Shown: positions 1-28,641, counted from the stretch's first letter. The stretch: 28,641 bases of DNA from Macrostomum lignano (GCA_002269645.1 NIVC01005008.1:1-28641); one strand, 5' to 3'. Translations and numbers: made by a program. The notes: generated from the sequence alone by a model not told the origin.

Positions 1-38
1 GTATCCGGTCTGAACAATGCAAATATTCATAATATCAA
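1..38. other. Only non-repetitive sequence in the window (left flank of the array)
   Basis: GTATCCGGTCTGAACAATGCAAATATTCATAATATCAA does not align to the unit; similarity starts at AGC (39-41). It is too short to assign a function or organism. Confidence 0.9.
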
Positions 39-51
39 AGCAGTAGCTTTG
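36..51. other. Inverted repeat CAAAGC-AGTA-GCTTTG spanning the flank/array junction
   Basis: CAAAGC (36-41) is the exact reverse complement of GCTTTG (46-51), with a 4-nt spacer. It exists only at the first unit; internal units keep just the 3-bp AGC/GCT part. Confidence 0.85.
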
Positions 52-959
52 GCGCCTATTAGCAGTAGCTTTAACGCTCTATTAGCAGTAGCTTTGGCGC
101 CTTATTAGCAGTAGCTTTGGCGCTCTATTAGCAGTAGCTTTGGCGCTCTATTAGCAGTAGCTTTGGCGCTCTATTAGCAGTAGCTTTGGTCCCTATTAGC
201 AGTAGCTTTGGTGCTCTATTAGCAGTAGCTTTGGCGCCTATTAGCAGTAGCTTTGGCGCTCTATTAGCAGTAGCTTTGGCGCTCTATTAGCAGTAGCTTT
301 GGCCCTATTAGCAGTAGCTTTGGCCCTATTAGCAGTAGCTTTGGTGCCCTATTAGCAGTAGCTTTGGTGCCCTATTAGCAGTAGCTTTGGTGCCCTATTA
401 GCAGTAGCTTTGGTGCCTATTAGCAGTAGCTTTGGCGCCTATTAGCAGTAGCTTTGGCGCTCTATTAGCAGTAGCTTTGGCGCTCTATTAGCAGTAGCTT
501 TGGCGCTCTATTAGCAGTAGCTTTGGCGCTCTATTAGCAGTAGCTTTGGCGCTCTATTAGCAGTAGCTTTGGCCCTATTAGCAGTAGCTTTGGCGCTCTA
601 TTAGCAGTAGCTTTGGCGCCTATTAGCAGTAGCTTTGGTGCCCTATTAGCAGTAGCTTTGGTGCCTATTAGCAGTAGCTTTGGTGCCCTATTAGCAGTAG
701 CTTTGGCCTATTAGCAGTAGCTTTGGTGCCTATTAGCAGTAGCTTTGGTCCCCTATTAGCAGTAGCTTTGGCGCTCTATTAGCAGTAGCTTTGGCGCTCT
801 ATTAGCAGTAGCTTTGGCGCTCTATTAGCAGTAGCTTTGGCGCCTTATTAGCAGTAGCTTTGGCGCTCTATTAGCAGTAGCTTTGGCGCTCTATTAGCAG
901 TAGCTTTGGCGCCTATTAGCAGTAGCTTTGGCGCTCTATTAGCAGTAGCTTTGGCGCTC

Positions 960-1646
960 TATTAGCAGTAGCTTTGGCGTCTATTAGCAGTAGCTTTGGT
1001 GCCCTATTAGCAGTAGCTTTGGCCCTATTAGCAGTAGCTTTGGCGCTCTATTAGCAGTAGCTTTGGTGCCCTATTAGCAGTAGCTTTGGCGCTCATTAGC
1101 AGTAGCTTTGGCGCTCTATTAGCAGTAGCTTTGGCCCTATTAGCAGTAGCTTTGGCCCTATTAGCAGTAGCTTTGGCCCTATTAGCAGTAGCTTTGGGCC
1201 CTATTAGCAGTAGCTTTGGCCCTATTAGCAGTAGCTTTGGCGCTCTATTAGCAGTAGCTTTGGCGCTCTATTAGCAGTAGCTTTGGCGCTCTATTAGCAG
1301 TAGCTTTGGCGCCTTATTAGCAGTAGCTTTGGCGCTCTATTAGCAGTAGCTTTGGCGCCTTATTAGCAGTAGCTTTGGCGCTCTATTAGCAGTAGCTTTG
1401 GCGCTCTATTAGCAGTAGCTTTGGCGCTCTATTAGCAGTAGCTTTGGTGCCCTATTAGCAGTAGCTTTGGCGCTATTAGCAGTAGCTTTGGCGCCTATTA
1501 GCAGTAGCTTTGGCCCTATTAGCAGTAGCTTTGGCGCCTTATTAGCAGTAGCTTTGGCGTCTATTAGCAGTAGCTTTGGTGCCCTATTAGCAGTAGCTTT
1601 GGCCCTATTAGCAGTAGCTTTGGCGCTCTATTAGCAGTAGCTTTGG
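960..1646. repeat. Internal repeated variant string: 960-1066 identical to 1540-1646 (linkers CGTC, TGCCC, CCC, CGCTC)
   Basis: 107-bp identity at offset 580, including the rare CGTC linker (seen only 4 times in the window). Confidence 0.7.
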
Positions 1647-2670
1647 CGCTCTATTAGCAGTAGCTTTGGCGCTCTATTAGCAGTAGCTTTGGCGCTCTAT
1701 TAGCAGTAGCTTTGGCGCTCTATTAGCAGTAGCTTTGGCGCTCTATTAGCAGTAGCTTTGGCGCTCTATTAGCAGTAGCTTTGGCGCTCTATTAGCAGTA
1801 GCTTTGGTGCCCTATTAGCAGTAGCTTTGGCGCTCTATTAGCAGTAGCTTTGGCGCTCTATTAGCAGTAGCTTTGGCCCTATTAGCAGTAGCTTTGGCGC
1901 TCTATTAGCAGTAGCTTTGGCGCTCTATTAGCAGTAGCTTTGGCGCTCTATTAGCAGTAGCTTTGGTGCCTATTAGCAGTAGCTTTGGCGCTCTATTAGC
2001 AGTAGCTTTGGCCTCTATTAGCAGTAGCTTTGGTGCCTATTAGCAGTAGCTTTGGTGCCCTATTAGCAGTAGCTTTGGTGCCCTATTAGCAGTAGCTTTG
2101 GTGCCTATTAGCAGTAGCTTTGGCCCTATTAGCAGTAGCTTTGGCGCTCTATTAGCAGTAGCTTTGGCGCTCTATTAGCAGTAGCTTTGGCGCTCTATTA
2201 GCAGTAGCTTTGGCGCCTATTAGCAGTAGCTTTGGCGCTCTATTAGCAGTAGCTTTGGCGCTCTATTAGCAGTAGCTTTGGCGCCTATTAGCAGTAGCTT
2301 TGGCGCTCTATTAGCAGTAGCTTTGGCGCCCTATTAGCAGTAGCTTTGGTGCCCTATTAGCAGTAGCTTTGGCGCCTTATTAGCAGTAGCTTTGGTGCCC
2401 TATTAGCAGTAGCTTTGGCGCCCTATTAGCAGTAGCTTTGGCGCCTATTAGCAGTAGCTTTGGCCCTATTAGCAGTAGCTTTGGCGCTCTATTAGCAGTA
2501 GCTTTGGCGCTCTATTAGCAGTAGCTTTGGCGCTCTATTAGCAGTAGCTTTGGCGCCTATTAGCAGTAGCTTTGGCGCTCTATTAGCAGTAGCTTTGGCG
2601 CCTTATTAGCAGTAGCTTTGGCGCCTATTAGCAGTAGCTTTGGCGCTCTATTAGCAGTAGCTTTGGCGCT

Positions 2671-5600
2671 CTATTAGCAGTAGCTTTGGCGTCTATTAGC
2701 AGTAGCTTTGGCGCCTATTAGCAGTAGCTTTGGCCCTATTAGCAGTAGCTTTGGCGCCTATTAGCAGTAGCTTTGGCGCTCTATTAGCAGTAGCTTTGGC
2801 GCCTATTAGCAGTAGCTTTGGCGCTCTATTAGCAGTAGCTTTGGCGCTTATTAGCAGTAGCTTTGGCGCTCTATTAGCAGTAGCTTTGGCGCTCTATTAG
2901 CAGTAGCTTTGGCGCCTTATTAGCAGTAGCTTTGGCGCTCTATTAGCAGTAGCTTTGGCGCTCTATTAGCAGTAGCTTTGGCGCCTATTAGCAGTAGCTT
3001 TGGCGCCTATTAGCAGTAGCTTTGGCGCTCTATTAGCAGTAGCTTTGGCGCCTATTAGCAGTAGCTTTGGCGCCTATTAGCAGTAGCTTTGGCGCTCTAT
3101 TAGCAGTAGCTTTGGCGCTCTATTAGCAGTAGCTTTGGCGCCTATTAGCAGTAGCTTTGGCGCTCTATTAGCAGTAGCTTTGGCGCCTATTAGCAGTAGC
3201 TTTGGCGCTCTATTAGCAGTAGCTTTGGCGCCTATTAGCAGTAGCTTTGGCGCTCTATTAGCAGTAGCTTTGGCGCTCTATTAGCAGTAGCTTTGGCGCT
3301 CTATTAGCAGTAGCTTTGGTGCCCTATTAGCAGTAGCTTTGGCGCCTATTAGCAGTAGCTTTGGCGCCTATTAGCAGTAGCTTTGGCCCTATTAGCAGTA
3401 GCTTTGGCGCTCTATTAGCAGTAGCTTTGGCGCTCTATTAGCAGTAGCTTTGGCGCTCTATTAGCAGTAGCTTTGGCGCTCTATTAGCAGTAGCTTTGGC
3501 GCCTATTAGCAGTAGCTTTGGCGCTCTATTAGCAGTAGCTTTGGCGCCTATTAGCAGTAGCTTTGGCCCTATTAGCAGTAGCTTTGGCGCTCTATTAGCA
3601 GTAGCTTTGGCGCTCTATTAGCAGTAGCTTTGGCGCTCTATTAGCAGTAGCTTTGGCGCTCTATTAGCAGTAGCTTTGGCGCTCTATTAGCAGTAGCTTT
3701 GGCGCTCTATTAGCAGTAGCTTTGGCGCTCTATTAGCAGTAGCTTTGGCGCCTATTAGCAGTAGCTTTGGCGCTCTATTAGCAGTAGCTTTGGCGCTCTA
3801 TTAGCAGTAGCTTTGGCGCTCTATTAGCAGTAGCTTTGGCGCTCTATTAGCAGTAGCTTTGGCGCTCTATTAGCAGTAGCTTTGGCCCTATTAGCAGTAG
3901 CTTTGGCCCTATTAGCAGTAGCTTTGGCGCCTATTAGCAGTAGCTTTGGCGCCTATTAGCAGTAGCTTTGGCGCTCTATTAGCAGTAGCTTTGGCGCTCT
4001 ATTAGCAGTAGCTTTGGCGCTCTATTAGCAGTAGCTTTGGCGCCCTATTAGCAGTAGCTTTGGCGCCTATTAGCAGTAGCTTTGGCGCCTATTAGCAGTA
4101 GCTTTGGCGCCCTATTAGCAGTAGCTTTGGCCCTATTAGCAGTAGCTTTGGCGCTCTATTAGCAGTAGCTTTGGCGCTCTATTAGCAGTAGCTTTGGCGC
4201 TCTATTAGCAGTAGCTTTGGCGCCTATTAGCAGTAGCTTTGGCGCTCTATTAGCAGTAGCTTTGGCGCCTATTAGCAGTAGCTTTGGCGCCTATTAGCAG
4301 TAGCTTTGGCGCTCTATTAGCAGTAGCTTTGGCGCTCTATTAGCAGTAGCTTTGGCGCTCTATTAGCAGTAGCTTTGGCGCCTATTAGCAGTAGCTTTGG
4401 CGCCTATTAGCAGTAGCTTTGGCGCCTCTATTAGCAGTAGCTTTGGCGCTCTATTAGCAGTAGCTTTGGCGCTATTAGCAGTAGCTTTGGCGCTCTATTA
4501 GCAGTAGCTTTGGCGCCTTATTAGCAGTAGCTTTGGCGCTCTATTAGCAGTAGCTTTGGCGCTCTATTAGCAGTAGCTTTGGCGCTATTAGCAGTAGCTT
4601 TGGCGCCTATTAGCAGTAGCTTTGGCGCTCTATTAGCAGTAGCTTTGGCGCCTATTAGCAGTAGCTTTGGCGCCTATTAGCAGTAGCTTTGGCGCTCTAT
4701 TAGCAGTAGCTTTGGCGCCTATTAGCAGTAGCTTTGGCGCCTATTAGCAGTAGCTTTGGCGCTCTATTAGCAGTAGCTTTGGCGCTCTATTAGCAGTAGC
4801 TTTGGCGCTCTATTAGCAGTAGCTTTGGCGCTCTATTAGCAGTAGCTTTGGCGCTCTATTAGCAGTAGCTTTGGCGCTCTATTAGCAGTAGCTTTGGCGC
4901 TCTATTAGCAGTAGCTTTGGCGCTCTATTAGCAGTAGCTTTGGCGCTCTATTAGCAGTAGCTTTGGCGCTCTATTAGCAGTAGCTTTGGCGCTCTATTAG
5001 CAGTAGCTTTGGCGCCTATTAGCAGTAGCTTTGGCCCTATTAGCAGTAGCTTTGGCGCTCTATTAGCAGTAGCTTTGGCGCTCTATTAGCAGTAGCTTTG
5101 GCGCCTATTAGCAGTAGCTTTGGCGCTCTATTAGCAGTAGCTTTGGCGCCTATTAGCAGTAGCTTTGGCGCTCTATTAGCAGTAGCTTTGGCGCTCTATT
5201 AGCAGTAGCTTTGGCGCTCTATTAGCAGTAGCTTTGGCGCTCTATTAGCAGTAGCTTTGGCGCTCTATTAGCAGTAGCTTTGGCGCTCTATTAGCAGTAG
5301 CTTTGGCGCTCTATTAGCAGTAGCTTTGGCGCTCTATTAGCAGTAGCTTTGGCGCTCTATTAGCAGTAGCTTTGGCGCTCTATTAGCAGTAGCTTTGGCG
5401 CCTATTAGCAGTAGCTTTGGTGCTCTATTAGCAGTAGCTTTGGCGCTCTATTAGCAGTAGCTTTGGCGCTCTATTAGCAGTAGCTTTGGCGCTCTATTAG
5501 CAGTAGCTTTGGCGCTCTATTAGCAGTAGCTTTGGCCCTATTAGCAGTAGCTTTGGCGCTCTATTAGCAGTAGCTTTGGTGCCTATTAGCAGTAGCTTTG

Positions 5601-6998
5601 GCGCTCTATTAGCAGTAGCTTTGGCGCTCTATTAGCAGTAGCTTTGGCGCTCTATTAGCAGTAGCTTTGGCGCTCTATTAGCAGTAGCTTTGGCGCTCTA
5701 TTAGCAGTAGCTTTGGCGCTCTATTAGCAGTAGCTTTGGCGCTCTATTAGCAGTAGCTTTGGCGCTCTATTAGCAGTAGCTTTGGCGCTCTATTAGCAGT
5801 AGCTTTGGCGCTCTATTAGCAGTAGCTTTGGTGCCTATTAGCAGTAGCTTTGGTGCCTATTAGCAGTAGCTTTGGCGCTCTATTAGCAGTAGCTTTGGCG
5901 CTCTATTAGCAGTAGCTTTGGCGCTCTATTAGCAGTAGCTTTGGCGCTATTAGCAGTAGCTTTGGCGCCTATTAGCAGTAGCTTTGGCCCTATTAGCAGT
6001 AGCTTTGGTGCCTATTAGCAGTAGCTTTGGCGCTCTATTAGCAGTAGCTTTGGCGCCTATTAGCAGTAGCTTTGGCGCTCTATTAGCAGTAGCTTTGGCG
6101 CTCTATTAGCAGTAGCTTTGGCCCTATTAGCAGTAGCTTTGGCGCTCTATTAGCAGTAGCTTTGGTGCCCTATTAGCAGTAGCTTTGGCGCCTATTAGCA
6201 GTAGCTTTGGTGCCTATTAGCAGTAGCTTTGGTGCCTATTAGCAGTAGCTTTGGCGCTCTATTAGCAGTAGCTTTGGCGCTCTATTAGCAGTAGCTTTGG
6301 CGCTCTATTAGCAGTAGCTTTGGCCCTATTAGCAGTAGCTTTGGTGCGCTCTATTAGCAGTAGCTTTGGGCCCTATTAGCAGTAGCTTTGGCGCCTATTA
6401 GCAGTAGCTTTGGCGCTCTATTAGCAGTAGCTTTGGCGCTCTATTAGCAGTAGCTTTGGCGCTCTATTAGCAGTAGCTTTGGCGCTATTAGCAGTAGCTT
6501 TGGCGCTCTATTAGCAGTAGCTTTGGCGCCTATTAGCAGTAGCTTTGGCGCTCTATTAGCAGTAGCTTTGGCGCTCTATTAGCAGTAGCTTTGGCGCTAT
6601 TAGCAGTAGCTTTGGCGCTCTATTAGCAGTAGCTTTGGTGCCCTATTAGCAGTAGCTTTGGCGCTCTATTAGCAGTAGCTTTGGCCTATTAGCAGTAGCT
6701 TTGGCGCTCTATTAGCAGTAGCTTTGGCGCCTATTAGCAGTAGCTTTGGCGCTCTATTAGCAGTAGCTTTGGCGCTCTATTAGCAGTAGCTTTGGCGCTC
6801 TATTAGCAGTAGCTTTGGCGCTCTATTAGCAGTAGCTTTGGCGCCTATTAGCAGTAGCTTTGGCGCTCTATTAGCAGTAGCTTTGGCGCCTATTAGCAGT
6901 AGCTTTGGCGTCTATTAGCAGTAGCTTTGGCGCCTATTAGCAGTAGCTTTGGCCCTATTAGCAGTAGCTTTGGCGCCTATTAGCAGTAGCTTTGGCGC
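2671..6998. repeat. Internal repeated variant string: 2671-2779 identical to 6890-6998 (linkers CGTC, CGCC, CCC, CGCC)
   Basis: 109-bp identity at offset 4219, carrying the other two CGTC linkers. Confidence 0.6.
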
Positions 6999-9900
6999 CT
7001 ATTAGCAGTAGCTTTGGCGCTCTATTAGCAGTAGCTTTGGCGCTCTATTAGCAGTAGCTTTGGCGCTCTATTAGCAGTAGCTTTGGCGCTCTATTAGCAG
7101 TAGCTTTGGCGCCTATTAGCAGTAGCTTTGGCGCTCTATTAGCAGTAGCTTTGGCGCCTATTAGCAGTAGCTTTGGCGCTCTATTAGCAGTAGCTTTGGC
7201 GCCTATTAGCAGTAGCTTTGGCGCCTATTAGCAGTAGCTTTGGCGCTCTATTAGCAGTAGCTTTGGCGCTATTAGCAGTAGCTTTGGCGCCTATTAGCAG
7301 TAGCTTTGGCGCTATTAGCAGTAGCTTTGGCGCTCTATTAGCAGTAGCTTTGGCGCTCTATTAGCAGTAGCTTTGGCGCCTATTAGCAGTAGCTTTGGCG
7401 CTCTATTAGCAGTAGCTTTGGCGCTCTATTAGCAGTAGCTTTGGCGCTCTATTAGCAGTAGCTTTGGCGCCTATTAGCAGTAGCTTTGGCGCTCTATTAG
7501 CAGTAGCTTTGGCGCTCTATTAGCAGTAGCTTTGGCGCTCTATTAGCAGTAGCTTTGGCGCTCTATTAGCAGTAGCTTTGGCGCTCTATTAGCAGTAGCT
7601 TTGGCGCTCTATTAGCAGTAGCTTTGGTCTATTAGCAGTAGCTTTGGCGCTCTATTAGCAGTAGCTTTGGCTATTAGCAGTAGCTTTGGCGCCTATTAGC
7701 AGTAGCTTTGGCGCCTATTAGCAGTAGCTTTGGCGCCTATTAGCAGTAGCTTTGGCGCCTATTAGCAGTAGCTTTGGCCCTATTAGCAGTAGCTTTGGCG
7801 CTCTATTAGCAGTAGCTTTGGCGCTCTATTAGCAGTAGCTTTGGCGCTCTATTAGCAGTAGCTTTGGCGCTCTATTAGCAGTAGCTTTGGCGCCTCTATT
7901 AGCAGTAGCTTTGGCGCCTATTAGCAGTAGCTTTGGCGCTCTATTAGCAGTAGCTTTGGCGCTCTATTAGCAGTAGCTTTGGCGCTCTATTAGCAGTAGC
8001 TTTGGCGCCTATTAGCAGTAGCTTTGGCGCTCTATTAGCAGTAGCTTTGGCGCCCTATTAGCAGTAGCTTTGGCGCCTATTAGCAGTAGCTTTGGCGCTC
8101 TATTAGCAGTAGCTTTGGCGCTCTATTAGCAGTAGCTTTGGCGCCTATTAGCAGTAGCTTTGGCGCCTATTAGCAGTAGCTTTGGCGCTCTATTAGCAGT
8201 AGCTTTGGCGCTCTATTAGCAGTAGCTTTGGCGCTCTATTAGCAGTAGCTTTGGCGCTCTATTAGCAGTAGCTTTGGCGCCTATTAGCAGTAGCTTTGGC
8301 GCTCTATTAGCAGTAGCTTTGGCGCTCTATTAGCAGTAGCTTTGGCGCTCTATTAGCAGTAGCTTTGGCGCTCTATTAGCAGTAGCTTTGGCGCTCTATT
8401 AGCAGTAGCTTTGGCGCCTATTAGCAGTAGCTTTGGCGCTCTATTAGCAGTAGCTTTGGCGCTCTATTAGCAGTAGCTTTGGCGCTCTATTAGCAGTAGC
8501 TTTGGCGCCTATTAGCAGTAGCTTTGGCGCCTATTAGCAGTAGCTTTGGCGCTCTATTAGCAGTAGCTTTGGCGCTCTATTAGCAGTAGCTTTGGCGCTC
8601 TATTAGCAGTAGCTTTGGCGCTCTATTAGCAGTAGCTTTGGCGCTCTATTAGCAGTAGCTTTGGCGCTCTATTAGCAGTAGCTTTGGCGCTCTATTAGCA
8701 GTAGCTTTGGCGCTCTATTAGCAGTAGCTTTGGCGCTCTATTAGCAGTAGCTTTGGCGCTCTATTAGCAGTAGCTTTGGCGCTCTATTAGCAGTAGCTTT
8801 GGCGCTCTATTAGCAGTAGCTTTGGCGCTCTATTAGCAGTAGCTTTGGCGCTCTATTAGCAGTAGCTTTGGCGCTCTATTAGCAGTAGCTCTATTAGCAG
8901 TAGCTTTGGCGCTCTATTAGCAGTAGCTTTGGCGCTCTATTAGCAGTAGCTTTGGCGCTCTATTAGCAGTAGCTTTGGCGCCTATTAGCAGTAGCTTTGG
9001 CGCTATTAGCAGTAGCTTTGGCGCCTATTAGCAGTAGCTTTGGCGCCTATTAGCAGTAGCTTTGGCGCTATTAGCAGTAGCTTTGGCGCTCTATTAGCAG
9101 TAGCTTTGGCGCTCTATTAGCAGTAGCTTTGGCGCTCTATTAGCAGTAGCTTTGGCGCTCTATTAGCAGTAGCTTTGGCGCTCTATTAGCAGTAGCTTTG
9201 GCGCTCTATTAGCAGTAGCTTTGGCGCTCTATTAGCAGTAGCTTTGGCGCTCTATTAGCAGTAGCTTTGGCGCTCTATTAGCAGTAGCTTTGGCGCTATT
9301 AGCAGTAGCTTTGGCGCTCTATTAGCAGTAGCTTTGGCGCTCTATTAGCAGTAGCTTTGGCGCCTATTAGCAGTAGCTTTGGCGCCTATTAGCAGTAGCT
9401 TTGGCGCCTATTAGCAGTAGCTTTGGCGCTCTATTAGCAGTAGCTTTGGCGCTCTATTAGCAGTAGCTTTGGCGCTCTATTAGCAGTAGCTTTGGCGCTC
9501 TATTAGCAGTAGCTTTGGCGCCTATTAGCAGTAGCTTTGGCGCTCTATTAGCAGTAGCTTTGGCGCTTATTAGCAGTAGCTTTGGCGCTCTATTAGCAGT
9601 AGCTTTGGCGCTCTATTAGCAGTAGCTTTGGCGCCTATTAGCAGTAGCTTTGGCGCCTATTAGCAGTAGCTTTGGCGCTCTATTAGCAGTAGCTTTGGCG
9701 CTCTATTAGCAGTAGCTTTGGCGCTCTATTAGCAGTAGCTTTGGCGCTCTATTAGCAGTAGCTTTGGCGCTCTATTAGCAGTAGCTTTGGCGCTCTATTA
9801 GCAGTAGCTTTGGCGCTCTATTAGCAGTAGCTTTGGCGCTCTATTAGCAGTAGCTTTGGCGCTCTATTAGCAGTAGCTTTGGCGCCTATTAGCAGTAGCT

Positions 9901-10662
9901 TTGGCGCTCTATTAGCAGTAGCTTTGGCGCTCTATTAGCAGTAGCTTTGGCGCTCTATTAGCAGTAGCTTTGGCGCTCTATTAGCAGTAGCTTTGGCGCC
10001 TATTAGCAGTAGCTTTGGCGCTCTATTAGCAGTAGCTTTGGCGCTCTATTAGCAGTAGCTTTGGCGCTCTATTAGCAGTAGCTTTGGCGCTCTATTAGCA
10101 GTAGCTTTGGCGCCTATTAGCAGTAGCTTTGGCGCTCTATTAGCAGTAGCTTTGGCGCTCTATTAGCAGTAGCTTTGGCGCTCTATTAGCAGTAGCTTTG
10201 GCGCTCTATTAGCAGTAGCTTTGGCGCTCTATTAGCAGTAGCTTTGGCGCTCTATTAGCAGTAGCTTTGGCGCTCTATTAGCAGTAGCTTTGGCGCTCTA
10301 TTAGCAGTAGCTTTGGCGCTCTATTAGCAGTAGCTTTGGCGCTCTATTAGCAGTAGCTTTGGCGCTCTATTAGCAGTAGCTTTGGCGCTCTATTAGCAGT
10401 AGCTTTGGCGCTCTATTAGCAGTAGCTTTGGCGCTCTATTAGCAGTAGCTTTGGCGCTCTATTAGCAGTAGCTTTGGCGCTCTATTAGCAGTAGCTTTGG
10501 CGCCTATTAGCAGTAGCTTTGGCGCTCTATTAGCAGTAGCTTTGGCGCTCTATTAGCAGTAGCTTTGGCGCTCTATTAGCAGTAGCTTTGGCGCTCTATT
10601 AGCAGTAGCTTTGGCGCTCTATTAGCAGTAGCTTTGGCGCTATTAGCAGTAGCTTTGGCGCC

Positions 10663-11605
10663 TATTAGCAGTAGCTTTGGCGCTCTATTAGCAGTAGCTT
10701 TGGCGCTCTATTAGCAGTAGCTTTGGCGCTCTATTAGCAGTAGCTTTGGCGCTCTATTAGCAGTAGCTTTGGCGCTCTATTAGCAGTAGCTTTGGCGCTC
10801 TATTAGCAGTAGCTTTGGCGCTCTATTAGCAGTAGCTTTGGCGCTCTATTAGCAGTAGCTTTGGCGCTCTATTAGCAGTAGCTTTGGCGCTCTATTAGCA
10901 GTAGCTTTGGCGCTCTATTAGCAGTAGCTTTGGCGCTCTATTAGCAGTAGCTTTGGCGCTCTATTAGCAGTAGCTTTGGCGCTCTATTAGCAGTAGCTTT
11001 GGCGCTCTATTAGCAGTAGCTTTGGCGCTCTATTAGCAGTAGCTTTGGCGCTCTATTAGCAGTAGCTTTGGCGCTCTATTAGCAGTAGCTTTGGCGCTCT
11101 ATTAGCAGTAGCTTTGGCGCTCTATTAGCAGTAGCTTTGGCGCTCTATTAGCAGTAGCTTTGGCGCTCTATTAGCAGTAGCTTTGGCGCTCTATTAGCAG
11201 TAGCTTTGGCGCTCTATTAGCAGTAGCTTTGGCGCTCTATTAGCAGTAGCTTTGGCGCTCTATTAGCAGTAGCTTTGGCGCTCTATTAGCAGTAGCTTTG
11301 GCGCTCTATTAGCAGTAGCTTTGGCGCTCTATTAGCAGTAGCTTTGGCGCTCTATTAGCAGTAGCTTTGGCGCTCTATTAGCAGTAGCTTTGGCGCTCTA
11401 TTAGCAGTAGCTTTGGCGCTCTATTAGCAGTAGCTTTGGCGCTCTATTAGCAGTAGCTTTGGCGCTCTATTAGCAGTAGCTTTGGCGCTCTATTAGCAGT
11501 AGCTTTGGCGCTCTATTAGCAGTAGCTTTGGCGCTCTATTAGCAGTAGCTTTGGCGCTCTATTAGCAGTAGCTTTGGCGCTCTATTAGCAGTAGCTTTGG
11601 CGCTC
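10663..11605. repeat. Longest perfectly homogeneous block: 41 consecutive 23-bp CGCTC units
   Basis: 943 bp = 41 x 23 with no variant linker. Other pure blocks: 11628-12179 (24 units), 20432-20983 (24) and 23564-24138 (25). Confidence 0.9.
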
Positions 11606-14600
11606 TATTAGCAGTAGCTTTGGCGCCTATTAGCAGTAGCTTTGGCGCTCTATTAGCAGTAGCTTTGGCGCTCTATTAGCAGTAGCTTTGGCGCTCTATT
11701 AGCAGTAGCTTTGGCGCTCTATTAGCAGTAGCTTTGGCGCTCTATTAGCAGTAGCTTTGGCGCTCTATTAGCAGTAGCTTTGGCGCTCTATTAGCAGTAG
11801 CTTTGGCGCTCTATTAGCAGTAGCTTTGGCGCTCTATTAGCAGTAGCTTTGGCGCTCTATTAGCAGTAGCTTTGGCGCTCTATTAGCAGTAGCTTTGGCG
11901 CTCTATTAGCAGTAGCTTTGGCGCTCTATTAGCAGTAGCTTTGGCGCTCTATTAGCAGTAGCTTTGGCGCTCTATTAGCAGTAGCTTTGGCGCTCTATTA
12001 GCAGTAGCTTTGGCGCTCTATTAGCAGTAGCTTTGGCGCTCTATTAGCAGTAGCTTTGGCGCTCTATTAGCAGTAGCTTTGGCGCTCTATTAGCAGTAGC
12101 TTTGGCGCTCTATTAGCAGTAGCTTTGGCGCTCTATTAGCAGTAGCTTTGGCGCTCTATTAGCAGTAGCTTTGGCGCTCTATTAGCAGTAGCTTTGGCGC
12201 CTATTAGCAGTAGCTTTGGCGCTATTAGCAGTAGCTTTGGCGCCTATTAGCAGTAGCTTTGGCGCCTATTAGCAGTAGCTTTGGCGCTCTATTAGCAGTA
12301 GCTTTGGCGCTCTATTAGCAGTAGCTTTGGCGCTCTATTAGCAGTAGCTTTGGCGCTCTATTAGCAGTAGCTTTGGCGCTCTATTAGCAGTAGCTTTGGC
12401 GCTCTATTAGCAGTAGCTTTGGCGCCTATTAGCAGTAGCTTTGGCGCTCTATTAGCAGTAGCTTTGGTCTATTAGCAGTAGCTTTGGCCTATTAGCAGTA
12501 GCTTTGGTGCCCTATTAGCAGTAGCTTTGGCCCTATTAGCAGTAGCTTTGGCGCCTATTAGCAGTAGCTTTGGCCCTATTAGCAGTAGCTTTGGCGCCTA
12601 TTAGCAGTAGCTTTGGCGCCTATTAGCAGTAGCTTTGGCGCCTATTAGCAGTAGCTTTGGCGCTCTATTAGCAGTAGCTTTGGCGCTCTATTAGCAGTAG
12701 CTTTGGCGCCTATTAGCAGTAGCTTTGGCGCCTATTAGCAGTAGCTTTGGCGCCTATTAGCAGTAGCTTTGGTCCTATTAGCAGTAGCTTTGGCGCCTAT
12801 TAGCAGTAGCTTTGGCGCTCTATTAGCAGTAGCTTTGGCGCTCTATTAGCAGTAGCTTTGGCGCTCTATTAGCAGTAGCTTTGGCGCTCTATTAGCAGTA
12901 GCTTTGGCGCTCTATTAGCAGTAGCTTTGGCGCCTATTAGCAGTAGCTTTGGCGCTCTATTAGCAGTAGCTTTGGCGCTCTATTAGCAGTAGCTTTGGCG
13001 CCTATTAGCAGTAGCTTTGGCCCTATTAGCAGTAGCTTTGGCGCCTATTAGCAGTAGCTTTGGCGCCTATTAGCAGTAGCTTTGGCGCCTATTAGCAGTA
13101 GCTTTGGCGCTCTATTAGCAGTAGCTTTGGCGCCTATTAGCAGTAGCTTTGGCGCTCTATTAGCAGTAGCTTTGGCGCTCTATTAGCAGTAGCTTTGGCG
13201 CTCTATTAGCAGTAGCTTTGGCGCTCTATTAGCAGTAGCTTTGGCCTATTAGCAGTAGCTTTGGTGCCTATTAGCAGTAGCTTTGGTGCCCTATTAGCAG
13301 TAGCTTTGGTGCCCTATTAGCAGTAGCTTTGGCGCCTATTAGCAGTAGCTTTGGCGCCTATTAGCAGTAGCTTTGGCGCCTATTAGCAGTAGCTTTGGCG
13401 CTCTATTAGCAGTAGCTTTGGCGCTCTATTAGCAGTAGCTTTGGCGCCTATTAGCAGTAGCTTTGGCGCCTATTAGCAGTAGCTTTGGCGCCTATTAGCA
13501 GTAGCTTTGGCGCCTATTAGCAGTAGCTTTGGCCCTATTAGCAGTAGCTTTGGCGCCTATTAGCAGTAGCTTTGGCGCTATTAGCAGTAGCTTTGGCGCT
13601 CTATTAGCAGTAGCTTTGGCGCTCTATTAGCAGTAGCTTTGGCGCTCTATTAGCAGTAGCTTTGGCGCCTATTAGCAGTAGCTTTGGCGCTCTATTAGCA
13701 GTAGCTTTGGCGCTCTATTAGCAGTAGCTTTGGCGCTCTATTAGCAGTAGCTTTGGCGCTCTATTAGCAGTAGCTTTGGCGCTCTATTAGCAGTAGCTTT
13801 GGCGCTCTATTAGCAGTAGCTTTGGCGCCTATTAGCAGTAGCTTTGGCGCTCTATTAGCAGTAGCTTTGGCGCTCTATTAGCAGTAGCTTTGGCGCTCTA
13901 TTAGCAGTAGCTTTGGCGCTCTATTAGCAGTAGCTTTGGCGCTCTATTAGCAGTAGCTTTGGCGCTCTATTAGCAGTAGCTTTGGCGCTCTATTAGCAGT
14001 AGCTTTGGCGCTCTATTAGCAGTAGCTTTGGCGCTATTAGCAGTAGCTTTGGCGCTCTATTAGCAGTAGCTTTGGCGCTCTATTAGCAGTAGCTTTGGCG
14101 CTCTATTAGCAGTAGCTTTGGCGCCTATTAGCAGTAGCTTTGGCGCTCTATTAGCAGTAGCTTTGGCGCTCTATTAGCAGTAGCTTTGGCGCTCTATTAG
14201 CAGTAGCTTTGGCGCTCTATTAGCAGTAGCTTTGGCGCTCTATTAGCAGTAGCTTTGGCGCTCTATTAGCAGTAGCTTTGGCGCTCTATTAGCAGTAGCT
14301 TTGGCGCTCTATTAGCAGTAGCTTTGGCGCTCTATTAGCAGTAGCTTTGGCGCTCTATTAGCAGTAGCTTTGGCGCCTATTAGCAGTAGCTTTGGCGCTC
14401 TATTAGCAGTAGCTTTGGCGCTCTATTAGCAGTAGCTTTGGCGCCTATTAGCAGTAGCTTTGGCGCTCTATTAGCAGTAGCTTTGGCGCTCTATTAGCAG
14501 TAGCTTTGGCGCTCTATTAGCAGTAGCTTTGGCGCTCTATTAGCAGTAGCTTTGGCGCTCTATTAGCAGTAGCTTTGGCGCCTATTAGCAGTAGCTTTGG

Positions 14601-23600: not shown

Positions 23601-25173
23601 TTGGCGCTCTATTAGCAGTAGCTTTGGCGCTCTATTAGCAGTAGCTTTGGCGCTCTATTAGCAGTAGCTTTGGCGCTCTATTAGCAGTAGCTTTGGCGCT
23701 CTATTAGCAGTAGCTTTGGCGCTCTATTAGCAGTAGCTTTGGCGCTCTATTAGCAGTAGCTTTGGCGCTCTATTAGCAGTAGCTTTGGCGCTCTATTAGC
23801 AGTAGCTTTGGCGCTCTATTAGCAGTAGCTTTGGCGCTCTATTAGCAGTAGCTTTGGCGCTCTATTAGCAGTAGCTTTGGCGCTCTATTAGCAGTAGCTT
23901 TGGCGCTCTATTAGCAGTAGCTTTGGCGCTCTATTAGCAGTAGCTTTGGCGCTCTATTAGCAGTAGCTTTGGCGCTCTATTAGCAGTAGCTTTGGCGCTC
24001 TATTAGCAGTAGCTTTGGCGCTCTATTAGCAGTAGCTTTGGCGCTCTATTAGCAGTAGCTTTGGCGCTCTATTAGCAGTAGCTTTGGCGCTCTATTAGCA
24101 GTAGCTTTGGCGCTCTATTAGCAGTAGCTTTGGCGCTCTATTAGCAGTAGCTTTGGCGCCTATTAGCAGTAGCTTTGGCCCTATTAGCAGTAGCTTTGGC
24201 CCTATTAGCAGTAGCTTTGGCGCCTATTAGCAGTAGCTTTGGCGCTCTATTAGCAGTAGCTTTGGCGCTCTATTAGCAGTAGCTTTGGCGCTCTATTAGC
24301 AGTAGCTTTGGCGCTCTATTAGCAGTAGCTTTGGCGCTCTATTAGCAGTAGCTTTGGCGCCTATTAGCAGTAGCTTTGGCGCTCTATTAGCAGTAGCTTT
24401 GGCGCTCTATTAGCAGTAGCTTTGGCGCTCTATTAGCAGTAGCTTTGGCGCTCTATTAGCAGTAGCTTTGGCGCTCTATTAGCAGTAGCTTTGGCGCTCT
24501 ATTAGCAGTAGCTTTGGCGCTTATTAGCAGTAGCTTTGGCGCTCTATTAGCAGTAGCTTTGGCGCTCTATTAGCAGTAGCTTTGGCGCTCTATTAGCAGT
24601 AGCTTTGGCGCTCTATTAGCAGTAGCTTTGGCGCTCTATTAGCAGTAGCTTTGGCGCTCTATTAGCAGTAGCTTTGGTCCCCTATTAGCAGTAGCTTTGG
24701 TGCCCTATTAGCAGTAGCTTTGGTGCTCTATTAGCAGTAGCTTTGGCGCTCTATTAGCAGTAGCTTTGGCGCTCTATTAGCAGTAGCTTTGGCGCCTATT
24801 AGCAGTAGCTTTGGCGCTCTATTAGCAGTAGCTTTGGCGCCTATTAGCAGTAGCTTTGGCGCTCTATTAGCAGTAGCTTTGGCGCTCTATTAGCAGTAGC
24901 TTTGGCGCCTATTAGCAGTAGCTTTGGCCCTATTAGCAGTAGCTTTGGTGCCTATTAGCAGTAGCTTTGGTGCCTATTAGCAGTAGCTTTGGCGCTATTA
25001 GCAGTAGCTTTGGCGCTCTATTAGCAGTAGCTTTGGCCCTATTAGCAGTAGCTTTGGCGCCTATTAGCAGTAGCTTTGGTGCCTATTAGCAGTAGCTTTG
25101 GTGCCCTATTAGCAGTAGCTTTGGTGCCCTATTAGCAGTAGCTTTGGTGCCCTATTAGCAGTAGCTTTGGCGC

Positions 25174-26085
25174 CTATTAGCAGTAGCTTTGGCGCTCTAT
25201 TAGCAGTAGCTTTGGCGCTCTATTAGCAGTAGCTTTGGCCCTATTAGCAGTAGCTTTGGCCCTATTAGCAGTAGCTTTGGTGCCTATTAGCAGTAGCTTT
25301 GGTGCCCTATTAGCAGTAGCTTTGGCGCCTATTAGCAGTAGCTTTGGCCCTATTAGCAGTAGCTTTGGCGCTCTATTAGCAGTAGCTTTGGCGCTCTATT
25401 AGCAGTAGCTTTGGCGCTCTATTAGCAGTAGCTTTGGCGCTCTATTAGCAGTAGCTTTGGCGCTCTATTAGCAGTAGCTTTGGCGCCTATTAGCAGTAGC
25501 TTTGGCGCTCTATTAGCAGTAGCTTTGGCGCTCTATTAGCAGTAGCTTTGGCCCTATTAGCAGTAGCTTTGGTCTCTATTAGCAGTAGCTTTGGCGCCTA
25601 TTAGCAGTAGCTTTGGCGCTCTATTAGCAGTAGCTTTGGCGCTCTATTAGCAGTAGCTTTGGCGCTCTATTAGCAGTAGCTTTGGCGCTCTATTAGCAGT
25701 AGCTTTGGCCCTATTAGCAGTAGCTTTGGCGCCTATTAGCAGTAGCTTTGGTGCTCTATTAGCAGTAGCTTTGGCGCTCTATTAGCAGTAGCTTTGGCGC
25801 TCTATTAGCAGTAGCTTTGGCGCTATTAGCAGTAGCTTTGGTGCCTATTAGCAGTAGCTTTGGTGCCCTATTAGCAGTAGCTTTGGCGCCTATTAGCAGT
25901 AGCTTTGGTGCTATTAGCAGTAGCTTTGGCGCTCTATTAGCAGTAGCTTTGGCGCTCTATTAGCAGTAGCTTTGGCGCTCTATTAGCAGTAGCTTTGGCC
26001 CTATTAGCAGTAGCTTTGGCCCTATTAGCAGTAGCTTTGGTGCCTATTAGCAGTAGCTTTGGTGCCCTATTAGCAGTAGCTTTGG
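25174..26085. repeat. Internal repeated variant string: 25174-25325 identical to 25934-26085 (linkers CGCTC, CGCTC, CCC, CCC, TGCC, TGCCC)
   Basis: 152-bp identity at offset 760, including four consecutive minority linkers in the same order. Confidence 0.65.
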
Positions 26086-28410
26086 TGCCTATTAGCAGTA
26101 GCTTTGGCGCCTATTAGCAGTAGCTTTGGCGCTCTATTAGCAGTAGCTTTGGCGCTCTATTAGCAGTAGCTTTGGCGCCTATTAGCAGTAGCTTTGGTGC
26201 CTATTAGCAGTAGCTTTGGTGCCTATTAGCAGTAGCTTTGGTGCCCTATTAGCAGTAGCTTTGGTGCCCTATTAGCAGTAGCTTTGGCGCTCTATTAGCA
26301 GTAGCTTTGGCGCTCTATTAGCAGTAGCTTTGGCGCTCTATTAGCAGTAGCTTTGGCGCTCTATTAGCAGTAGCTTTGGCGCTCTATTAGCAGTAGCTTT
26401 GGCGCTCTATTAGCAGTAGCTTTGGCGCCTATTAGCAGTAGCTTTGGCGCTCTATTAGCAGTAGCTTTGGCGCTCTATTAGCAGTAGCTTTGGCGCTCTA
26501 TTAGCAGTAGCTTTGGCGCTCTATTAGCAGTAGCTTTGGCGCTCTATTAGCAGTAGCTTTGGCGCTCTATTAGCAGTAGCTTTGGCGCTCTATTAGCAGT
26601 AGCTTTGGCGCTCTATTAGCAGTAGCTTTGGCGCTCTATTAGCAGTAGCTTTGGCGCTCTATTAGCAGTAGCTTTGGCGCTCTATTAGCAGTAGCTTTGG
26701 CGCTCTATTAGCAGTAGCTTTGGCGCTCTATTAGCAGTAGCTTTGGCGCTCTATTAGCAGTAGCTTTGGCGCTCTATTAGCAGTAGCTTTGGCGCCTATT
26801 AGCAGTAGCTTTGGCGCCTATTAGCAGTAGCTTTGGCGCCTATTAGCAGTAGCTTTGGCGCTCTATTAGCAGTAGCTTTGGCGCCTATTAGCAGTAGCTT
26901 TGGCGCTCTATTAGCAGTAGCTTTGGCGCTCTATTAGCAGTAGCTTTGGCGCTCTATTAGCAGTAGCTTTGGCGCCTCTATTAGCAGTAGCTTTGGCGCT
27001 CTATTAGCAGTAGCTTTGGCTATTAGCAGTAGCTTTGGCGCTATTAGCAGTAGCTTTGGCGCTCTATTAGCAGTAGCTTTGGCGCTCTATTAGCAGTAGC
27101 TTTGGCGCCTATTAGCAGTAGCTTTGGCCCTATTAGCAGTAGCTTTGGTCCCTATTAGCAGTAGCTTTGGCGCCTATTAGCAGTAGCTTTGGTGCTCTAT
27201 TAGCAGTAGCTTTGGCGCTCTATTAGCAGTAGCTTTGGCGCTCTATTAGCAGTAGCTTTGGCGCCTATTAGCAGTAGCTTTGGCGCCTATTAGCAGTAGC
27301 TTTGGCGCCTATTAGCAGTAGCTTTGGCGCTCTATTAGCAGTAGCTTTGGCGCTCTATTAGCAGTAGCTTTGGCGCTCTATTAGCAGTAGCTTTGGCGCT
27401 CTATTAGCAGTAGCTTTGGCGCTCTATTAGCAGTAGCTTTGGCGCTATTAGCAGTAGCTTTGGCGCTCTATTAGCAGTAGCTTTGGTGCTCTATTAGCAG
27501 TAGCTTTGGCGCTCTATTAGCAGTAGCTTTGGCGCTCTATTAGCAGTAGCTTTGGCGCTCTATTAGCAGTAGCTTTGGCGCCTATTAGCAGTAGCTTTGG
27601 CGCCTATTAGCAGTAGCTTTGGTGCCTATTAGCAGTAGCTTTGGTGCCTATTAGCAGTAGCTTTGGCCCTATTAGCAGTAGCTTTGGTGCCTATTAGCAG
27701 TAGCTTTGGCGCTCTATTAGCAGTAGCTTTGGCGCTCTATTAGCAGTAGCTTTGGCCCTATTAGCAGTAGCTTTGGCGCCTATTAGCAGTAGCTTTGGTG
27801 CCCTATTAGCAGTAGCTTTGGGCCCTATTAGCAGTAGCTTTGGTCCCTATTAGCAGTAGCTTTGGCCCTATTAGCAGTAGCTTTGGCGCTCTATTAGCAG
27901 TAGCTTTGGCGCTCTATTAGCAGTAGCTTTGGCGCTATTAGCAGTAGCTTTGGCGCTCTATTAGCAGTAGCTTTGGCGCTCTATTAGCAGTAGCTTTGGC
28001 GCTCTATTAGCAGTAGCTTTGGCGCTCTATTAGCAGTAGCTTTGGCGCTCTATTAGCAGTAGCTTTGGCGCTCTATTAGCAGTAGCTTTGCCTATTAGCA
28101 GTAGCTTTGGCGCTCTATTAGCAGTAGCTTTGGCGCCTATTAGCAGTAGCTTTGGCGCCCTATTAGCAGTAGCTTTGGCGCTCTATTAGCAGTAGCTTTG
28201 GCGCCTCTATTAGCAGTAGCTTTGGTGCCTATTAGCAGTAGCTTTGGTGCCTATTAGCAGTAGCTTTGGCGATATTAGCAGTAGCTTTGGCGCTCTATTA
28301 GCAGTAGCTTTGGCCTCTATTAGCAGTAGCTTTGGCGCTCTATTAGCAGTAGCTTTGGCGCCTATTAGCAGTAGCTTTGGCCCTATTAGCAGTAGCTTTG
28401 GTGCCCTATT

Positions 28411-28641
28411 AGCAGTAGCTTGGCGCTATTAGCAGTAGCTTTGTGCCCTATTAGCAGTAGCTTTGGCCCAATTAGCAGTAGCTTTGGTGCCGCTATTAGC
28501 AGTAGCTTTGGCGCTCTATTAGCAGTAGCTTTGGCGCTCTATTAGCAGTAGCTTGCGCTATTAGCAGTAGCTTTGGTGCGCTATTAGCAGTAGCTGGCGC
28601 CCTATTAGCAGTAGCTTTGGCGCCTATTAGCAGTAGCTTGG
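28411..28641. other. Degenerate terminal segment of the array (core lesions concentrated at the window end)
   Basis: About six of the last ~10 cores are damaged: TTT>TT (~28421, ~28554, ~28639), TTT>T (~28595), GG>G (~28443, ~28555) and TATT>AATT (28470). Only about five core lesions occur in the preceding 28.4 kb. Confidence 0.85.

What the first reader, a model, noticed from the sequence alone, without database searches (positions are those of the whole stretch)
39..28641. 28.6-kb array with an invariant core and one hypervariable junction: candidate product of iterative short-template copying (telomerase-/RT-like)
Seen: the 13-mer ATTAGCAGTAGCT is intact in every full unit I read, and the 18-bp core has only about five lesions before the last 230 bp. 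In contrast, more than 20 different linkers of 1-7 nt occur at a single position, between GG and TATT. The array has one orientation, unique sequence only on the left, and a + strand slightly rich in G+T (14/23). Established: neutrally drifting satellites usually scatter mutations over the whole unit. Heterogeneity confined to the repeat junction is characteristic of enzymes that copy a short template and re-align, for example the heterogeneous telomeres of S. pombe and S. cerevisiae. Long 23-25-nt telomere units occur in Candida/Kluyveromyces, and bacterial defence-associated RTs (DRT2, DRT10) make tandem-repeat cDNA. Inference: this could be an unrecognised long-unit telomere or an RT-made concatemer. 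No RT or template gene is in the window, and I do not recognise the motif. Ordinary satellite DNA or a technical artefact remain live alternatives.
Basis: partly seen in the sequence, partly recalled or inferred. Interest (0 to 1): 0.72.

Follow-up and report, generated by a model that had tools for sequence, protein, structure and literature searches.

The report
23-bp tandem array, variable linker only
Almost the whole window is one 28.6-kb head-to-tail array of a 23-bp unit in which 18 bases never vary and only a 5-base linker does; it is most likely satellite-type repeat DNA of unknown origin, and a telomerase-made telomere is possible but not shown.

Summary
One array runs from 39 to 28639 (period 23, about 1265 copies). 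The 13-mer ATTAGCAGTAGCT is exact 1266 times. The 18-bp core has 10 lesions, 5 of them in the last 240 bp. Between GG and TATT there are 27 linker types of 1-7 nt. All 19 multi-copy variant types lie in the linker and none in the core (P about 3e-13), so this is not neutral scatter.

The linker variants are not independent junction noise. They form two linked families, CGC+TC and TGC+CC/C (odds ratio 36). They sit in domains, with pure CGCTC runs up to 41 units and clustered TGCCC/TGCC/CCC patches. The common variants are point changes or 1-2-nt deletions, not register shifts.

I found no array, template-like 1.2-unit copy or flank match in prokaryotic genomes, JGI metagenomes, IMG/VR, plasmids, phages or E. 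coli. The motif is not in the searchable literature, and it does not resemble known long yeast telomere units. There is no long ORF, no Rfam hit and no G-run. Bacterial DRT10/DRT2 products fit poorly.

My best reading (0.45) is a real, probably eukaryotic, recombination-homogenised satellite or minisatellite with a constrained core. Rivals are a two-template telomerase telomere (0.2), an ALT-like terminal array (0.1), a long-read consensus artefact at a modified linker (0.12) and others. Whether the array is terminal cannot be tested here.

The parts
1..38 (.). Unique left flank (32% GC). It is not a degenerate repeat.
   Evidence: Read directly. Local alignment to the repeat is no better than shuffles. 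It is absent from JGI metagenome contigs, IMG/VR and plasmids.
39..57 (+). First, 5'-truncated unit (AGCAGTAGCTTTGGCGCC). The array starts abruptly inside the core.
39..28641 (+). Head-to-tail array of about 1266 units. Each unit is the 18-bp core TATTAGCAGTAGCTTTGG plus a 1-7-nt linker (consensus CGCTC). It has one orientation and runs off the right end of the window.
   Evidence: TRF; k-mer counts.
58..80 (+). Second unit, with TTTAA instead of TTTGG. This is the only substitution-type core lesion in the body.
57..2986 (+). Heterogeneous proximal domain: 45% CGCTC, 17 unit types, 23 T-class linkers.
9979..12202 (+). Most homogeneous domain: 93% CGCTC and no T-class linkers. It includes the longest pure run, 41 units at 10663-11606.
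   Evidence: The longest run expected if units were independent is about 13.
8878..8892 (+). 15-bp short unit, an 8-bp deletion between two GCT microhomologies.
24660..26270 (+). Heterogeneous domain rich in TGCCC/TGCC/CCC linkers: 36% CGCTC, 23 T-class linkers.
28400..28641 (+). Error-rich end. It holds five of the ten core lesions plus a damaged last unit, mostly T or G deletions in short homopolymers. This looks like thin long-read coverage at a contig end.

Best explanation
The array is genuine genomic tandem-repeat DNA of the satellite or minisatellite class. It most likely comes from a eukaryote sequenced with error-prone long reads. I infer that the window is a repeat edge of the assembly graph that carries 38 bp of one flank.

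The array grows and is homogenised in place by in-register exchange between units: unequal sister-chromatid exchange, gene conversion or replication slippage. Two unit lineages, linker CGCTC and linker TGCCC, have been spread locally together with their 1-2-nt deletion derivatives (CGCC, CGC, TGCC, CCC, CC). This gives a mosaic of young homogeneous blocks and older mixed blocks.

The 18-bp core stays identical because units with core changes do not propagate. The likeliest reason is that the core is the recognition site of a sequence-specific DNA-binding protein, in the way the CENP-B box or telomere-protein sites are kept within repeats. The GC-rich linker is both unconstrained and made of overlapping micro-repeats (GG, GCGC, CTCT, C2-4).

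Shown: the anatomy, the confinement of variation, the linkage within the linker and the domain structure. Inferred: eukaryotic origin, the exchange mechanism and protein binding to the core. Whether the array lies at a chromosome end is unknown.
For: - The array is single-orientation and head-to-tail, with no coding capacity: ORFs are at most 62 aa, on the + strand only.
- Variant units behave as heritable types that spread locally. TGCCC-to-TGCCC adjacency is 9.8x expectation, TGCC/TGCCC cross-adjacency is 6-9x, and CGCC-to-CGCC is 1.7x.
- T-class linkers fall in 36 clusters against 62 +/- 3.6 in shuffles, and composition is regionally heterogeneous (p 6e-33).
- Pure CGCTC runs reach 41 units against about 13 expected.
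- Linkage inside the linker (odds ratio 36) points to lineages, not independent events.
- Singletons in the body are split 5 core to 5 linker, whereas all 19 multi-copy variants are in the linker. Changes do occur in the core but never spread, as expected under constraint.
- The array is absent from 185,579 prokaryotic species genomes, plasmids, phages, E. coli, IMG/VR and JGI metagenomes. That fits a eukaryotic lineage-specific satellite.
- Protein-binding boxes kept within satellites are known, for example the 17-bp CENP-B box (PMC8122249).
Against: - Selection on single units of a 1266-unit array should be weak, so the complete absence of propagated core variants is not easily explained.
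- The T3 run in the core should slip about as readily as C3 in the linker, yet it never varies in the body.
- No multi-unit higher-order repeat or long duplicated variant string was found beyond a local-shuffle null (observed maximum 29.8 bits against 24.1 +/- 3.0, maximum 30.3). Unequal exchange often leaves such traces.
- The array begins abruptly, without degenerate edge repeats.
- The source organism and the genomic position are unknown.
Confidence: 0.45

Rival explanations
1. It is a long-unit telomere made by telomerase. A template RNA of about 1.2-1.5 units is copied repeatedly. Two template variants (one giving CGCTC, one giving TGCCC) are each used processively and produce runs. Slippage at translocation drops one base just before TATT in both families.
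For: - Propagated variation is confined to one site per unit. Telomerase is known to produce position-biased variant repeats (PMC3919612).
- The same 1-nt shortening recurs in both families: CGCTC to CGCC (239 against 793) and TGCCC to TGCC (31 against 36).
- Linkage within the linker is what two templates would give.
- The array has one orientation. The unique flank is 5' of the slightly G+T-rich strand (60.4%, GC skew +0.09), and the array runs to the contig end, where coverage appears to thin out.
- A 23-nt unit is within the range known for budding yeasts (own knowledge).
- Telomerase RNA gene duplications that produce mixed telomeric repeats have been reported in Andrena bees (abstract of bioRxiv 10.1101/2025.04.29.651168, listed).
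Against: - There is no G cluster: 3 GGG in 28.6 kb.
- The unit shows no similarity to long yeast telomere units (sequences from memory).
- The frequency of CGCC varies between domains (2 in 77 units in one block, about 40-50% in others). A constant slippage rate therefore fails.
- The common variants are not register-shift products.
- 28.6 kb or more is very long for the fungi known to have 23-25-nt units (own knowledge).
- No terminal position, TERT or template could be examined.
Confidence: 0.2
2. It is a telomerase-independent terminal array, maintained by break-induced replication, rolling circle copying or gene conversion (ALT-like). Known examples are Microstromatales yeasts, chironomids and sciarid flies.
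For: - Domain-wise spread of variant units is what recombination-based telomere maintenance does to variant repeats (PMC3919612).
- Non-canonical terminal arrays of 1.6-21.6 kb exist in Jaminaea angkorensis (PMC13234504).
- Terminal repeats of 14-22 bp exist in Rhynchosciara (PMC7694509 and PMC12051294).
- The array reaches the contig end.
Against: - The units of the Microstromatales arrays are 52-178 bp.
- No periodic multi-unit pattern was seen of the kind that rolling-circle copying of a small circle would give.
- Terminal position is untested.
- It has the same difficulty as the satellite model in explaining the invariant core.
Confidence: 0.1
3. The array is real but in truth uniform or nearly so. 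The linker heterogeneity is technical: a modified base in the GCGC/CpG linker, present in patches, disturbs long-read basecalling and consensus within a 5-nt window.
For: - The last 240 bp show raw long-read-type homopolymer deletions, so the assembly comes from an error-prone long-read platform.
- 91% of linkers are CGCTC or can be derived from it by deletion alone. All other common changes are C/T swaps. Both are typical long-read error types (own knowledge).
- The variable window is about the size of a pore k-mer (own knowledge) and contains the only CpG of the unit.
Against: - In the variable domains the core, including its T3 run, is error-free (for example 24660-26270), so general read quality is high there.
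- The double substitution TGCCC is six times commoner than TGCTC and is clustered.
- A systematic error in an identical sequence context should give the same consensus in every unit, unless modification is patchy.
Confidence: 0.12
4. The whole array is an in vitro or assembly artefact, for example template-independent or rolling-circle polymerase product from whole-genome amplification, or a mis-assembled or collapsed repeat of arbitrary length.
For: - The contig consists of nothing but repeat plus 38 nt.
- The array was not found in any collection searched.
- The array length in an assembly of reads shorter than the array is not reliable (own knowledge).
Against: - The array has a single orientation over 28.6 kb, with no inverted chimeras.
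- The structured, domain-wise variant pattern is not expected of a polymerase runaway product.
- Neither the unit nor the flank resembles the sequencing adapters that I compared by eye from memory. No tool was run for this.
Confidence: 0.05
5. It is double-stranded concatemeric cDNA made by a bacterial defence reverse transcriptase (DRT10- or DRT2-like) and captured by long-read sequencing.
For: - It is a tandem repeat with a short unique 5' leader.
- DRT10 makes kilobase-length tandem-repeat DNA by a telomerase-like A-B-A' realignment, and precision varies between homologues (PMC12632851).
Against: - DRT10 products are single-stranded and protein-linked, with a 9-nt unit in Eco3DRT10. A 10-nt B segment gave only low activity and a 20-nt one gave none.
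- A DRT2-type product needs a stop-free frame, but every frame here has stops.
- The exact 18-mer core occurs only as 26 single hits in 185,579 prokaryotic species genomes, at about the number I estimate for chance (17). None of the hits extends into the unit.
- There is no match of about 21-28 nt or more in E. coli complete genomes, plasmids or phages, and there are only chance hits in IMG/VR.
- No Rfam family was hit.
Confidence: 0.03

Closest known systems
Minisatellites and satellites with variant-repeat interspersion (for example human MS32-type minisatellites), and satellites that carry a conserved protein-binding box (the 17-bp CENP-B box)
   Same: - Long head-to-tail array in one orientation.
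- A few unit types that differ at one or two sites and are interspersed in patches.
- A conserved stretch of 17-18 bp within the unit (PMC8122249; MS32 from my own knowledge).
   Different: - Here there are 27 linker types against zero propagated core variants.
- There is no higher-order repeat.
- No binding protein is known, and the organism and locus are unknown.
[quoted passage not shown]
   Same: - The unit length is in the known range.
- Variation is restricted to particular unit positions (PMC3919612).
- The strand running towards the open end is mildly G+T-rich.
   Different: - No G cluster, and no sequence similarity to those units.
- Variants are linked and arranged in domains, not independent.
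- The array is at least 28.6 kb, against a few hundred bp in those yeasts (own knowledge).
- Terminal position and template are untested.
Telomerase-independent terminal tandem arrays: Microstromatales yeasts (52-178-bp units, 1.6-21.6 kb) and sciarid flies (14-22-bp units)
   Same: - The array size is similar.
- Short non-canonical units are known in Rhynchosciara.
- Recombination-type spread of variants.
   Different: - The unit length differs from the Microstromatales arrays.
- The motif is not found in those papers or anywhere in the searchable literature.
- Terminal position is unknown.
DRT10 (UG17) and DRT2 bacterial defence reverse transcriptases
   Same: Both produce tandem-repeat DNA by iterative copying of a short RNA template with realignment.
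   Different: - The DRT10 products characterised are single-stranded and protein-primed, with a 9-nt unit in the system studied in most detail.
- No template, RT gene or ncRNA was found.
- There is no open frame as in DRT2.

Membership tests
Telomerase-synthesised telomere | The array lies at chromosome termini, with the G-rich strand running 5' to 3' to the end | not testable with these tools
   Only 38 nt of flank are present and the right end of the window lies inside the array.
Telomerase-synthesised telomere | The genome holds TERT and a telomerase RNA with a template of one unit plus an alignment region | not testable with these tools
   No eukaryotic genome collection is available. The window holds no gene and gives no Rfam hit in 1-3000.
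Telomerase-synthesised telomere | G-rich strand with G clusters | tested here: not met
   GC skew is +0.09, the longest G run is 3, and GGG occurs 3 times in 28.6 kb. G+T is 60%. Some yeast telomeres also lack strong G clusters (own knowledge), so this feature is not absolute.
Telomerase-synthesised telomere | Variant repeats arise at specific template positions | tested here: met
   All 19 multi-copy variant types lie in the 5-nt linker.
Telomerase-synthesised telomere | Variant repeats are made independently at each repeat addition and are explained by misincorporation or realignment on one template | tested here: not met
   Neighbouring units are correlated and form domains. Linker positions 1 and 4 are linked, odds ratio 36. 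A single template does not explain this; two templates could.
DRT10 / DRT2 RT-made tandem-repeat cDNA | An A-B-A' template in an ncRNA next to a UG-class RT (with SLATT) in a bacterial genome | tested here: not met
   The 18-mer core gives 26 single, non-extending hits in 185,579 species genomes. There is no match in E. coli, plasmids or phages, and only chance hits in IMG/VR. Caveat: the genome scan covers only 11 of the 23 possible registers of a 28-nt template.
DRT10 / DRT2 RT-made tandem-repeat cDNA | Short unit (9 nt in Eco3DRT10; a 20-nt B segment was inactive); single-stranded, protein-primed product | tested here: not met
   The unit here is 23 nt, against PMC12632851. Strandedness and protein priming cannot be tested from sequence.
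DRT10 / DRT2 RT-made tandem-repeat cDNA | DRT2: the concatemer creates a stop-free reading frame | tested here: not met
   The longest ORF is 62 aa. Every frame of the consensus unit meets a stop.
Satellite / minisatellite DNA | Long head-to-tail non-coding array in one orientation | tested here: met
Satellite / minisatellite DNA | Unit variants spread locally (concerted evolution), giving patches of like units | tested here: met
   Adjacency enrichment is up to 9.8x. Variants form domains and clusters.
Satellite / minisatellite DNA | Under neutrality, mutations are scattered over the whole unit | tested here: not met
   0 of 19 propagated variant types are in the core, P 2.6e-13. This feature is expected of neutral satellites but does not define the class.
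Satellite / minisatellite DNA | Present in the genome in independent data, at one or more loci | not testable with these tools
   No reads and no source genome are available. The array is absent from all collections searched.

The most novel reading that the evidence does not exclude
The array is the product of an undescribed telomerase or telomerase-like RT that copies a 23-nt unit. At least two template variants are used processively, and there is frequent one-base slippage at the translocation step. That would make it a new long-unit, heterogeneous telomere type, at least 28 kb long, in an organism where none has been described.
Probability: 0.2. Interest if true: 0.65.

Novelty: new member of a known kind. 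Interest (0 to 1): 0.3.

Why it matters
If it is a satellite, it is a clean natural example of strong sequence constraint inside a very short repeat unit: 18 invariant bases in about 1260 copies next to a free 5-nt linker. That points to a sequence-specific binding protein worth looking for.

If it is a telomere, it would add a new long-unit, two-template heterogeneous telomere, and a new telomerase RNA to find.

If the linker variation is technical, it is a useful warning. Long-read consensus at a modified motif can mimic junction hypervariability.

In all three cases the motif is not in the literature or collections searched here.

Tried and rejected
**Tracing the source or relatives**
- The exact 18-mer core in genome contigs gave 26 single hits that do not extend into the unit.
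- IMG/VR gave 3 chance hits for the core and 3 chance hits for the junction 17-mer.
- A two-unit pattern in metagenome contigs gave 0 hits.
- The flank gave 0 hits in metagenome contigs, IMG/VR and plasmids in distant mode.
- Megablast and blastn of the array against plasmids, phages and E. coli found nothing.

**Tracing through proteins**
- The six longest + strand ORFs and others are not on record and not in the 15-billion-protein collection, whether translated from the DNA or typed with M as first residue.
- One homology search gave nothing at E <= 0.001.

**Literature**
- 12-13-mers covering every rotation and both strands hit only unrelated texts.

**RNA family and structure**
- There is no Rfam hit in 1-3000.
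- Single-strand folds of either strand are no better than shuffles (z +1.0 and +0.5).

**Higher-order repeat or large internal duplications**
- Nothing exceeds a local-shuffle null.

**Flank as degenerate repeat**
- Rejected.

- None.

**Other ideas considered and rejected**
- Coding repeat: rejected because of stops in all frames.
- CRISPR-like array: rejected because the spacers would be 1-7 nt.
- Designed operator array with random linkers: rejected because the core matches no operator I know and the linkers are not random.
- Sequencing-adapter concatemer: rejected because there is no resemblance.

Full report
**What is there**

The window is 38 nt of unique, AT-rich sequence followed by a single tandem array that runs to the last base. 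Tandem Repeats Finder reports 39..28639, period 23, 1265.5 copies, 96% matches and 2% indels.

Each unit is an 18-bp core, TATTAGCAGTAGCTTTGG, followed by a short linker whose consensus is CGCTC. The 13-mer ATTAGCAGTAGCT occurs 1266 times exactly, with spacings of 15-25 bp (859 x 23, 289 x 22, 93 x 21). It never occurs in reverse complement, so every unit carries it and the array has one orientation.

The full 18-mer is exact 1255 times. Ten units have a lesion in it. Five are in the body (units starting at 58, 1073, 8878, 14766 and 28075) and five are in 28408-28583, where the truncated last unit is also damaged.

Between GG and TATT there are 27 different linkers of 1-7 nt. The commonest are CGCTC 793, CGCC 239, CCC 52, TGCCC 36, CGC 33 and TGCC 31.

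**Is the confinement of variation more than chance?**

Yes. In the body of the array there are 30 unit types, of which 20 occur at least twice. All 19 non-consensus multi-copy types differ from the consensus in the linker only. If the 23 positions were equally mutable, the probability of that is (5/23)^19 = 2.6e-13.

The ten singletons of the body are split evenly, five in the core and five in the linker only. Changes, or residual sequencing errors, do therefore occur in the core at a low rate, but none has ever been propagated. The T3 run of the core never varies in the body, although the C2-4 and CTCT stretches of the linker do. Simple slippage-proneness does not account for the contrast.

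**The linker variants are not independent junction noise**

- Neighbouring units are alike more often than in shuffles. Identity at lag 1 is 0.553 against 0.432 +/- 0.009, and the excess persists to lag 20.
- Composition differs strongly between 50-unit bins (chi2 271.6, 48 df, p 6e-33). The fraction of CGCTC per bin ranges from 0.20 to 0.94.
- The longest pure CGCTC run is 41 units (10663-11606), where about 13 would be expected if units were independent.
- Linkers beginning with T form 36 clusters against 62 +/- 3.6 in shuffles. TGCCC follows TGCCC 9.8 times more often than expected.
- Within the linker, the first and fourth bases are linked. CGC is followed by TC (793) more often than by C or CC (248), whereas TGC is followed by C or CC (67) and rarely by TC (6). 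The odds ratio is 36 and p is 2e-32.
- The double variant TGCCC (36) is much commoner than either single-step intermediate, TGCTC (6) or CGCCC (9).

There are thus at least two unit lineages, CGCTC and TGCCC. Each has shortened derivatives: CGCC and CGC from the first, TGCC, CCC and CC from the second. They are arranged as a mosaic of homogeneous and mixed domains.

No multi-unit higher-order repeat or long duplicated string of variants stands out from a local-shuffle null.

**What it is not**

- It does not code. The longest ORF is 62 aa, all ORFs of 25 aa or more are on the + strand, and every frame of the consensus unit meets a stop.
- It matches no Rfam family in 1-3000.
- Neither strand folds better than shuffles.
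- The 38-nt flank is not a decayed repeat.

**Searches for relatives, a template or the source all failed**

- The 18-mer core occurs in 26 stretches of the 596-Gb prokaryotic species collection. My arithmetic gives about 17 expected by chance. Each hit is single, and none extends into the rest of the unit.
- IMG/VR gave three chance hits for the core and three for a junction-centred 17-mer.
- A two-unit pattern gave nothing in JGI metagenome contigs.
- The flank gave nothing in metagenomes, IMG/VR or plasmids.
- blastn of the array, or of 2.8 units, found nothing in plasmids, phages or complete E. coli genomes.
- The ORF products are not in the protein collections.
- 12-13-mers covering all rotations and both strands of the unit are not in the searchable literature except as chance matches in unrelated papers.

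One gap remains. By my reckoning, a 28-nt template would contain that 18-mer in 11 of 23 registers.

**Technology**

The last 240 bp carry half of all core lesions. They are mostly deletions in T3 or G2, and erratic singleton linkers occur there too. That is what the thinly covered end of a contig from an error-prone long-read platform looks like (inference).

The rest of the core is essentially error-free, also inside the most variable domains such as 24660-26270. The linker calls there are therefore not due to generally poor reads.

They could still be due to a base modification in the GCGC/CpG linker that is present in patches:
- 91% of linkers are CGCTC or deletion derivatives of it, and the rest are mainly C/T swaps.
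- Against this, TGCCC is a clustered double substitution, and a systematic error in an identical context should give the same consensus everywhere.

I put this technical reading at about 0.12.

**Comparison with template-copying systems**

Telomerase is known to make variant repeats at particular template positions, whereas recombination-based maintenance spreads existing variants (PMC3919612). This array shows both signatures: position-restricted variation, and domain-wise spread with linkage.

- A single template with random realignment does not fit. The common variants are internal deletions and substitutions, not register shifts, and the CGCC frequency differs greatly between domains.
- Two template variants used processively, plus slippage before TATT, would fit most features. 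Mixed telomeres caused by telomerase RNA duplications have been reported (abstract listed).
- There is no G cluster.
- Nothing about terminal position, TERT or a template can be tested here.

DRT10 fits poorly. Its products are single-stranded and protein-primed, with a 9-nt unit in Eco3DRT10, and lengthening the template's B segment to 20 nt abolished synthesis (PMC12632851). DRT2 needs a stop-free frame.

Non-canonical terminal arrays maintained without telomerase are known. Examples are 52-178-bp units in arrays of 1.6-21.6 kb in Jaminaea (PMC13234504) and 14-22-bp units in Rhynchosciara. They are the nearest precedents if the array is terminal.

**Verdict**

The array and its unusual pattern of variation are real features of the sequence. 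The most likely explanation (0.45) is a lineage-specific satellite or minisatellite, probably eukaryotic, that is homogenised in place by exchange between units. Its 18-bp core would be under constraint, plausibly as a protein-binding site, beside a free, slip-prone linker.

The rivals are:
- a telomerase product with two templates (0.2);
- an ALT-like terminal array (0.1);
- a long-read consensus artefact at a modified linker (0.12);
- a wholly artefactual array (0.05);
- a bacterial RT concatemer (0.03).

The decisive data are the source record, raw reads, short-read k-mer counts, and a TERT or template search in the same genome. None of these can be reached with these tools.

Noticed in passing
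window 8873-8905: One unit is only 15 bp long (ATTAGCAGTAGCTCT). It is an 8-bp deletion between two GCT triplets, which looks like a microhomology-mediated deletion. TRF lists it as a separate period-15 row.
   Followed up: partly
window 58-80: The second unit of the array reads TTTAACGCTC instead of TTTGGCGCTC. It is the only substitution-type core lesion in the body, and it lies right at the proximal edge.
   Followed up: no
window 28400-28641: Core lesions are concentrated here: five damaged units plus the truncated last one. They are mostly T or G deletions in short homopolymers, as at a thinly covered long-read contig end.
   Followed up: partly
window, whole array: The CGCC linker creates the palindrome GGCGCC (a NarI/KasI site, 264 copies). 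GCGC occurs 1099 times and AGCT 1267 times. The only CpG of the unit lies in the variable linker.
   Followed up: no
L006, L019, L022 and L016, L018; L009, L027, L029: Several of the chance hits of the 18-mer in prokaryotic and viral contigs are the same sequence context seen in related organisms. This explains why 26 hits exceed the roughly 17 expected.
   Followed up: partly
window 20432-20984 and 22765-23225 (units 906-939 and 1005-1038): The same string of 34 units (20 x CGCTC, 4 x CGCC, 10 x CGCTC) occurs twice, 99 units apart. Its information content (29.8 bits) lies within the range of the local-shuffle null (maximum 30.3), so it is not significant evidence for a block duplication.
   Followed up: yes
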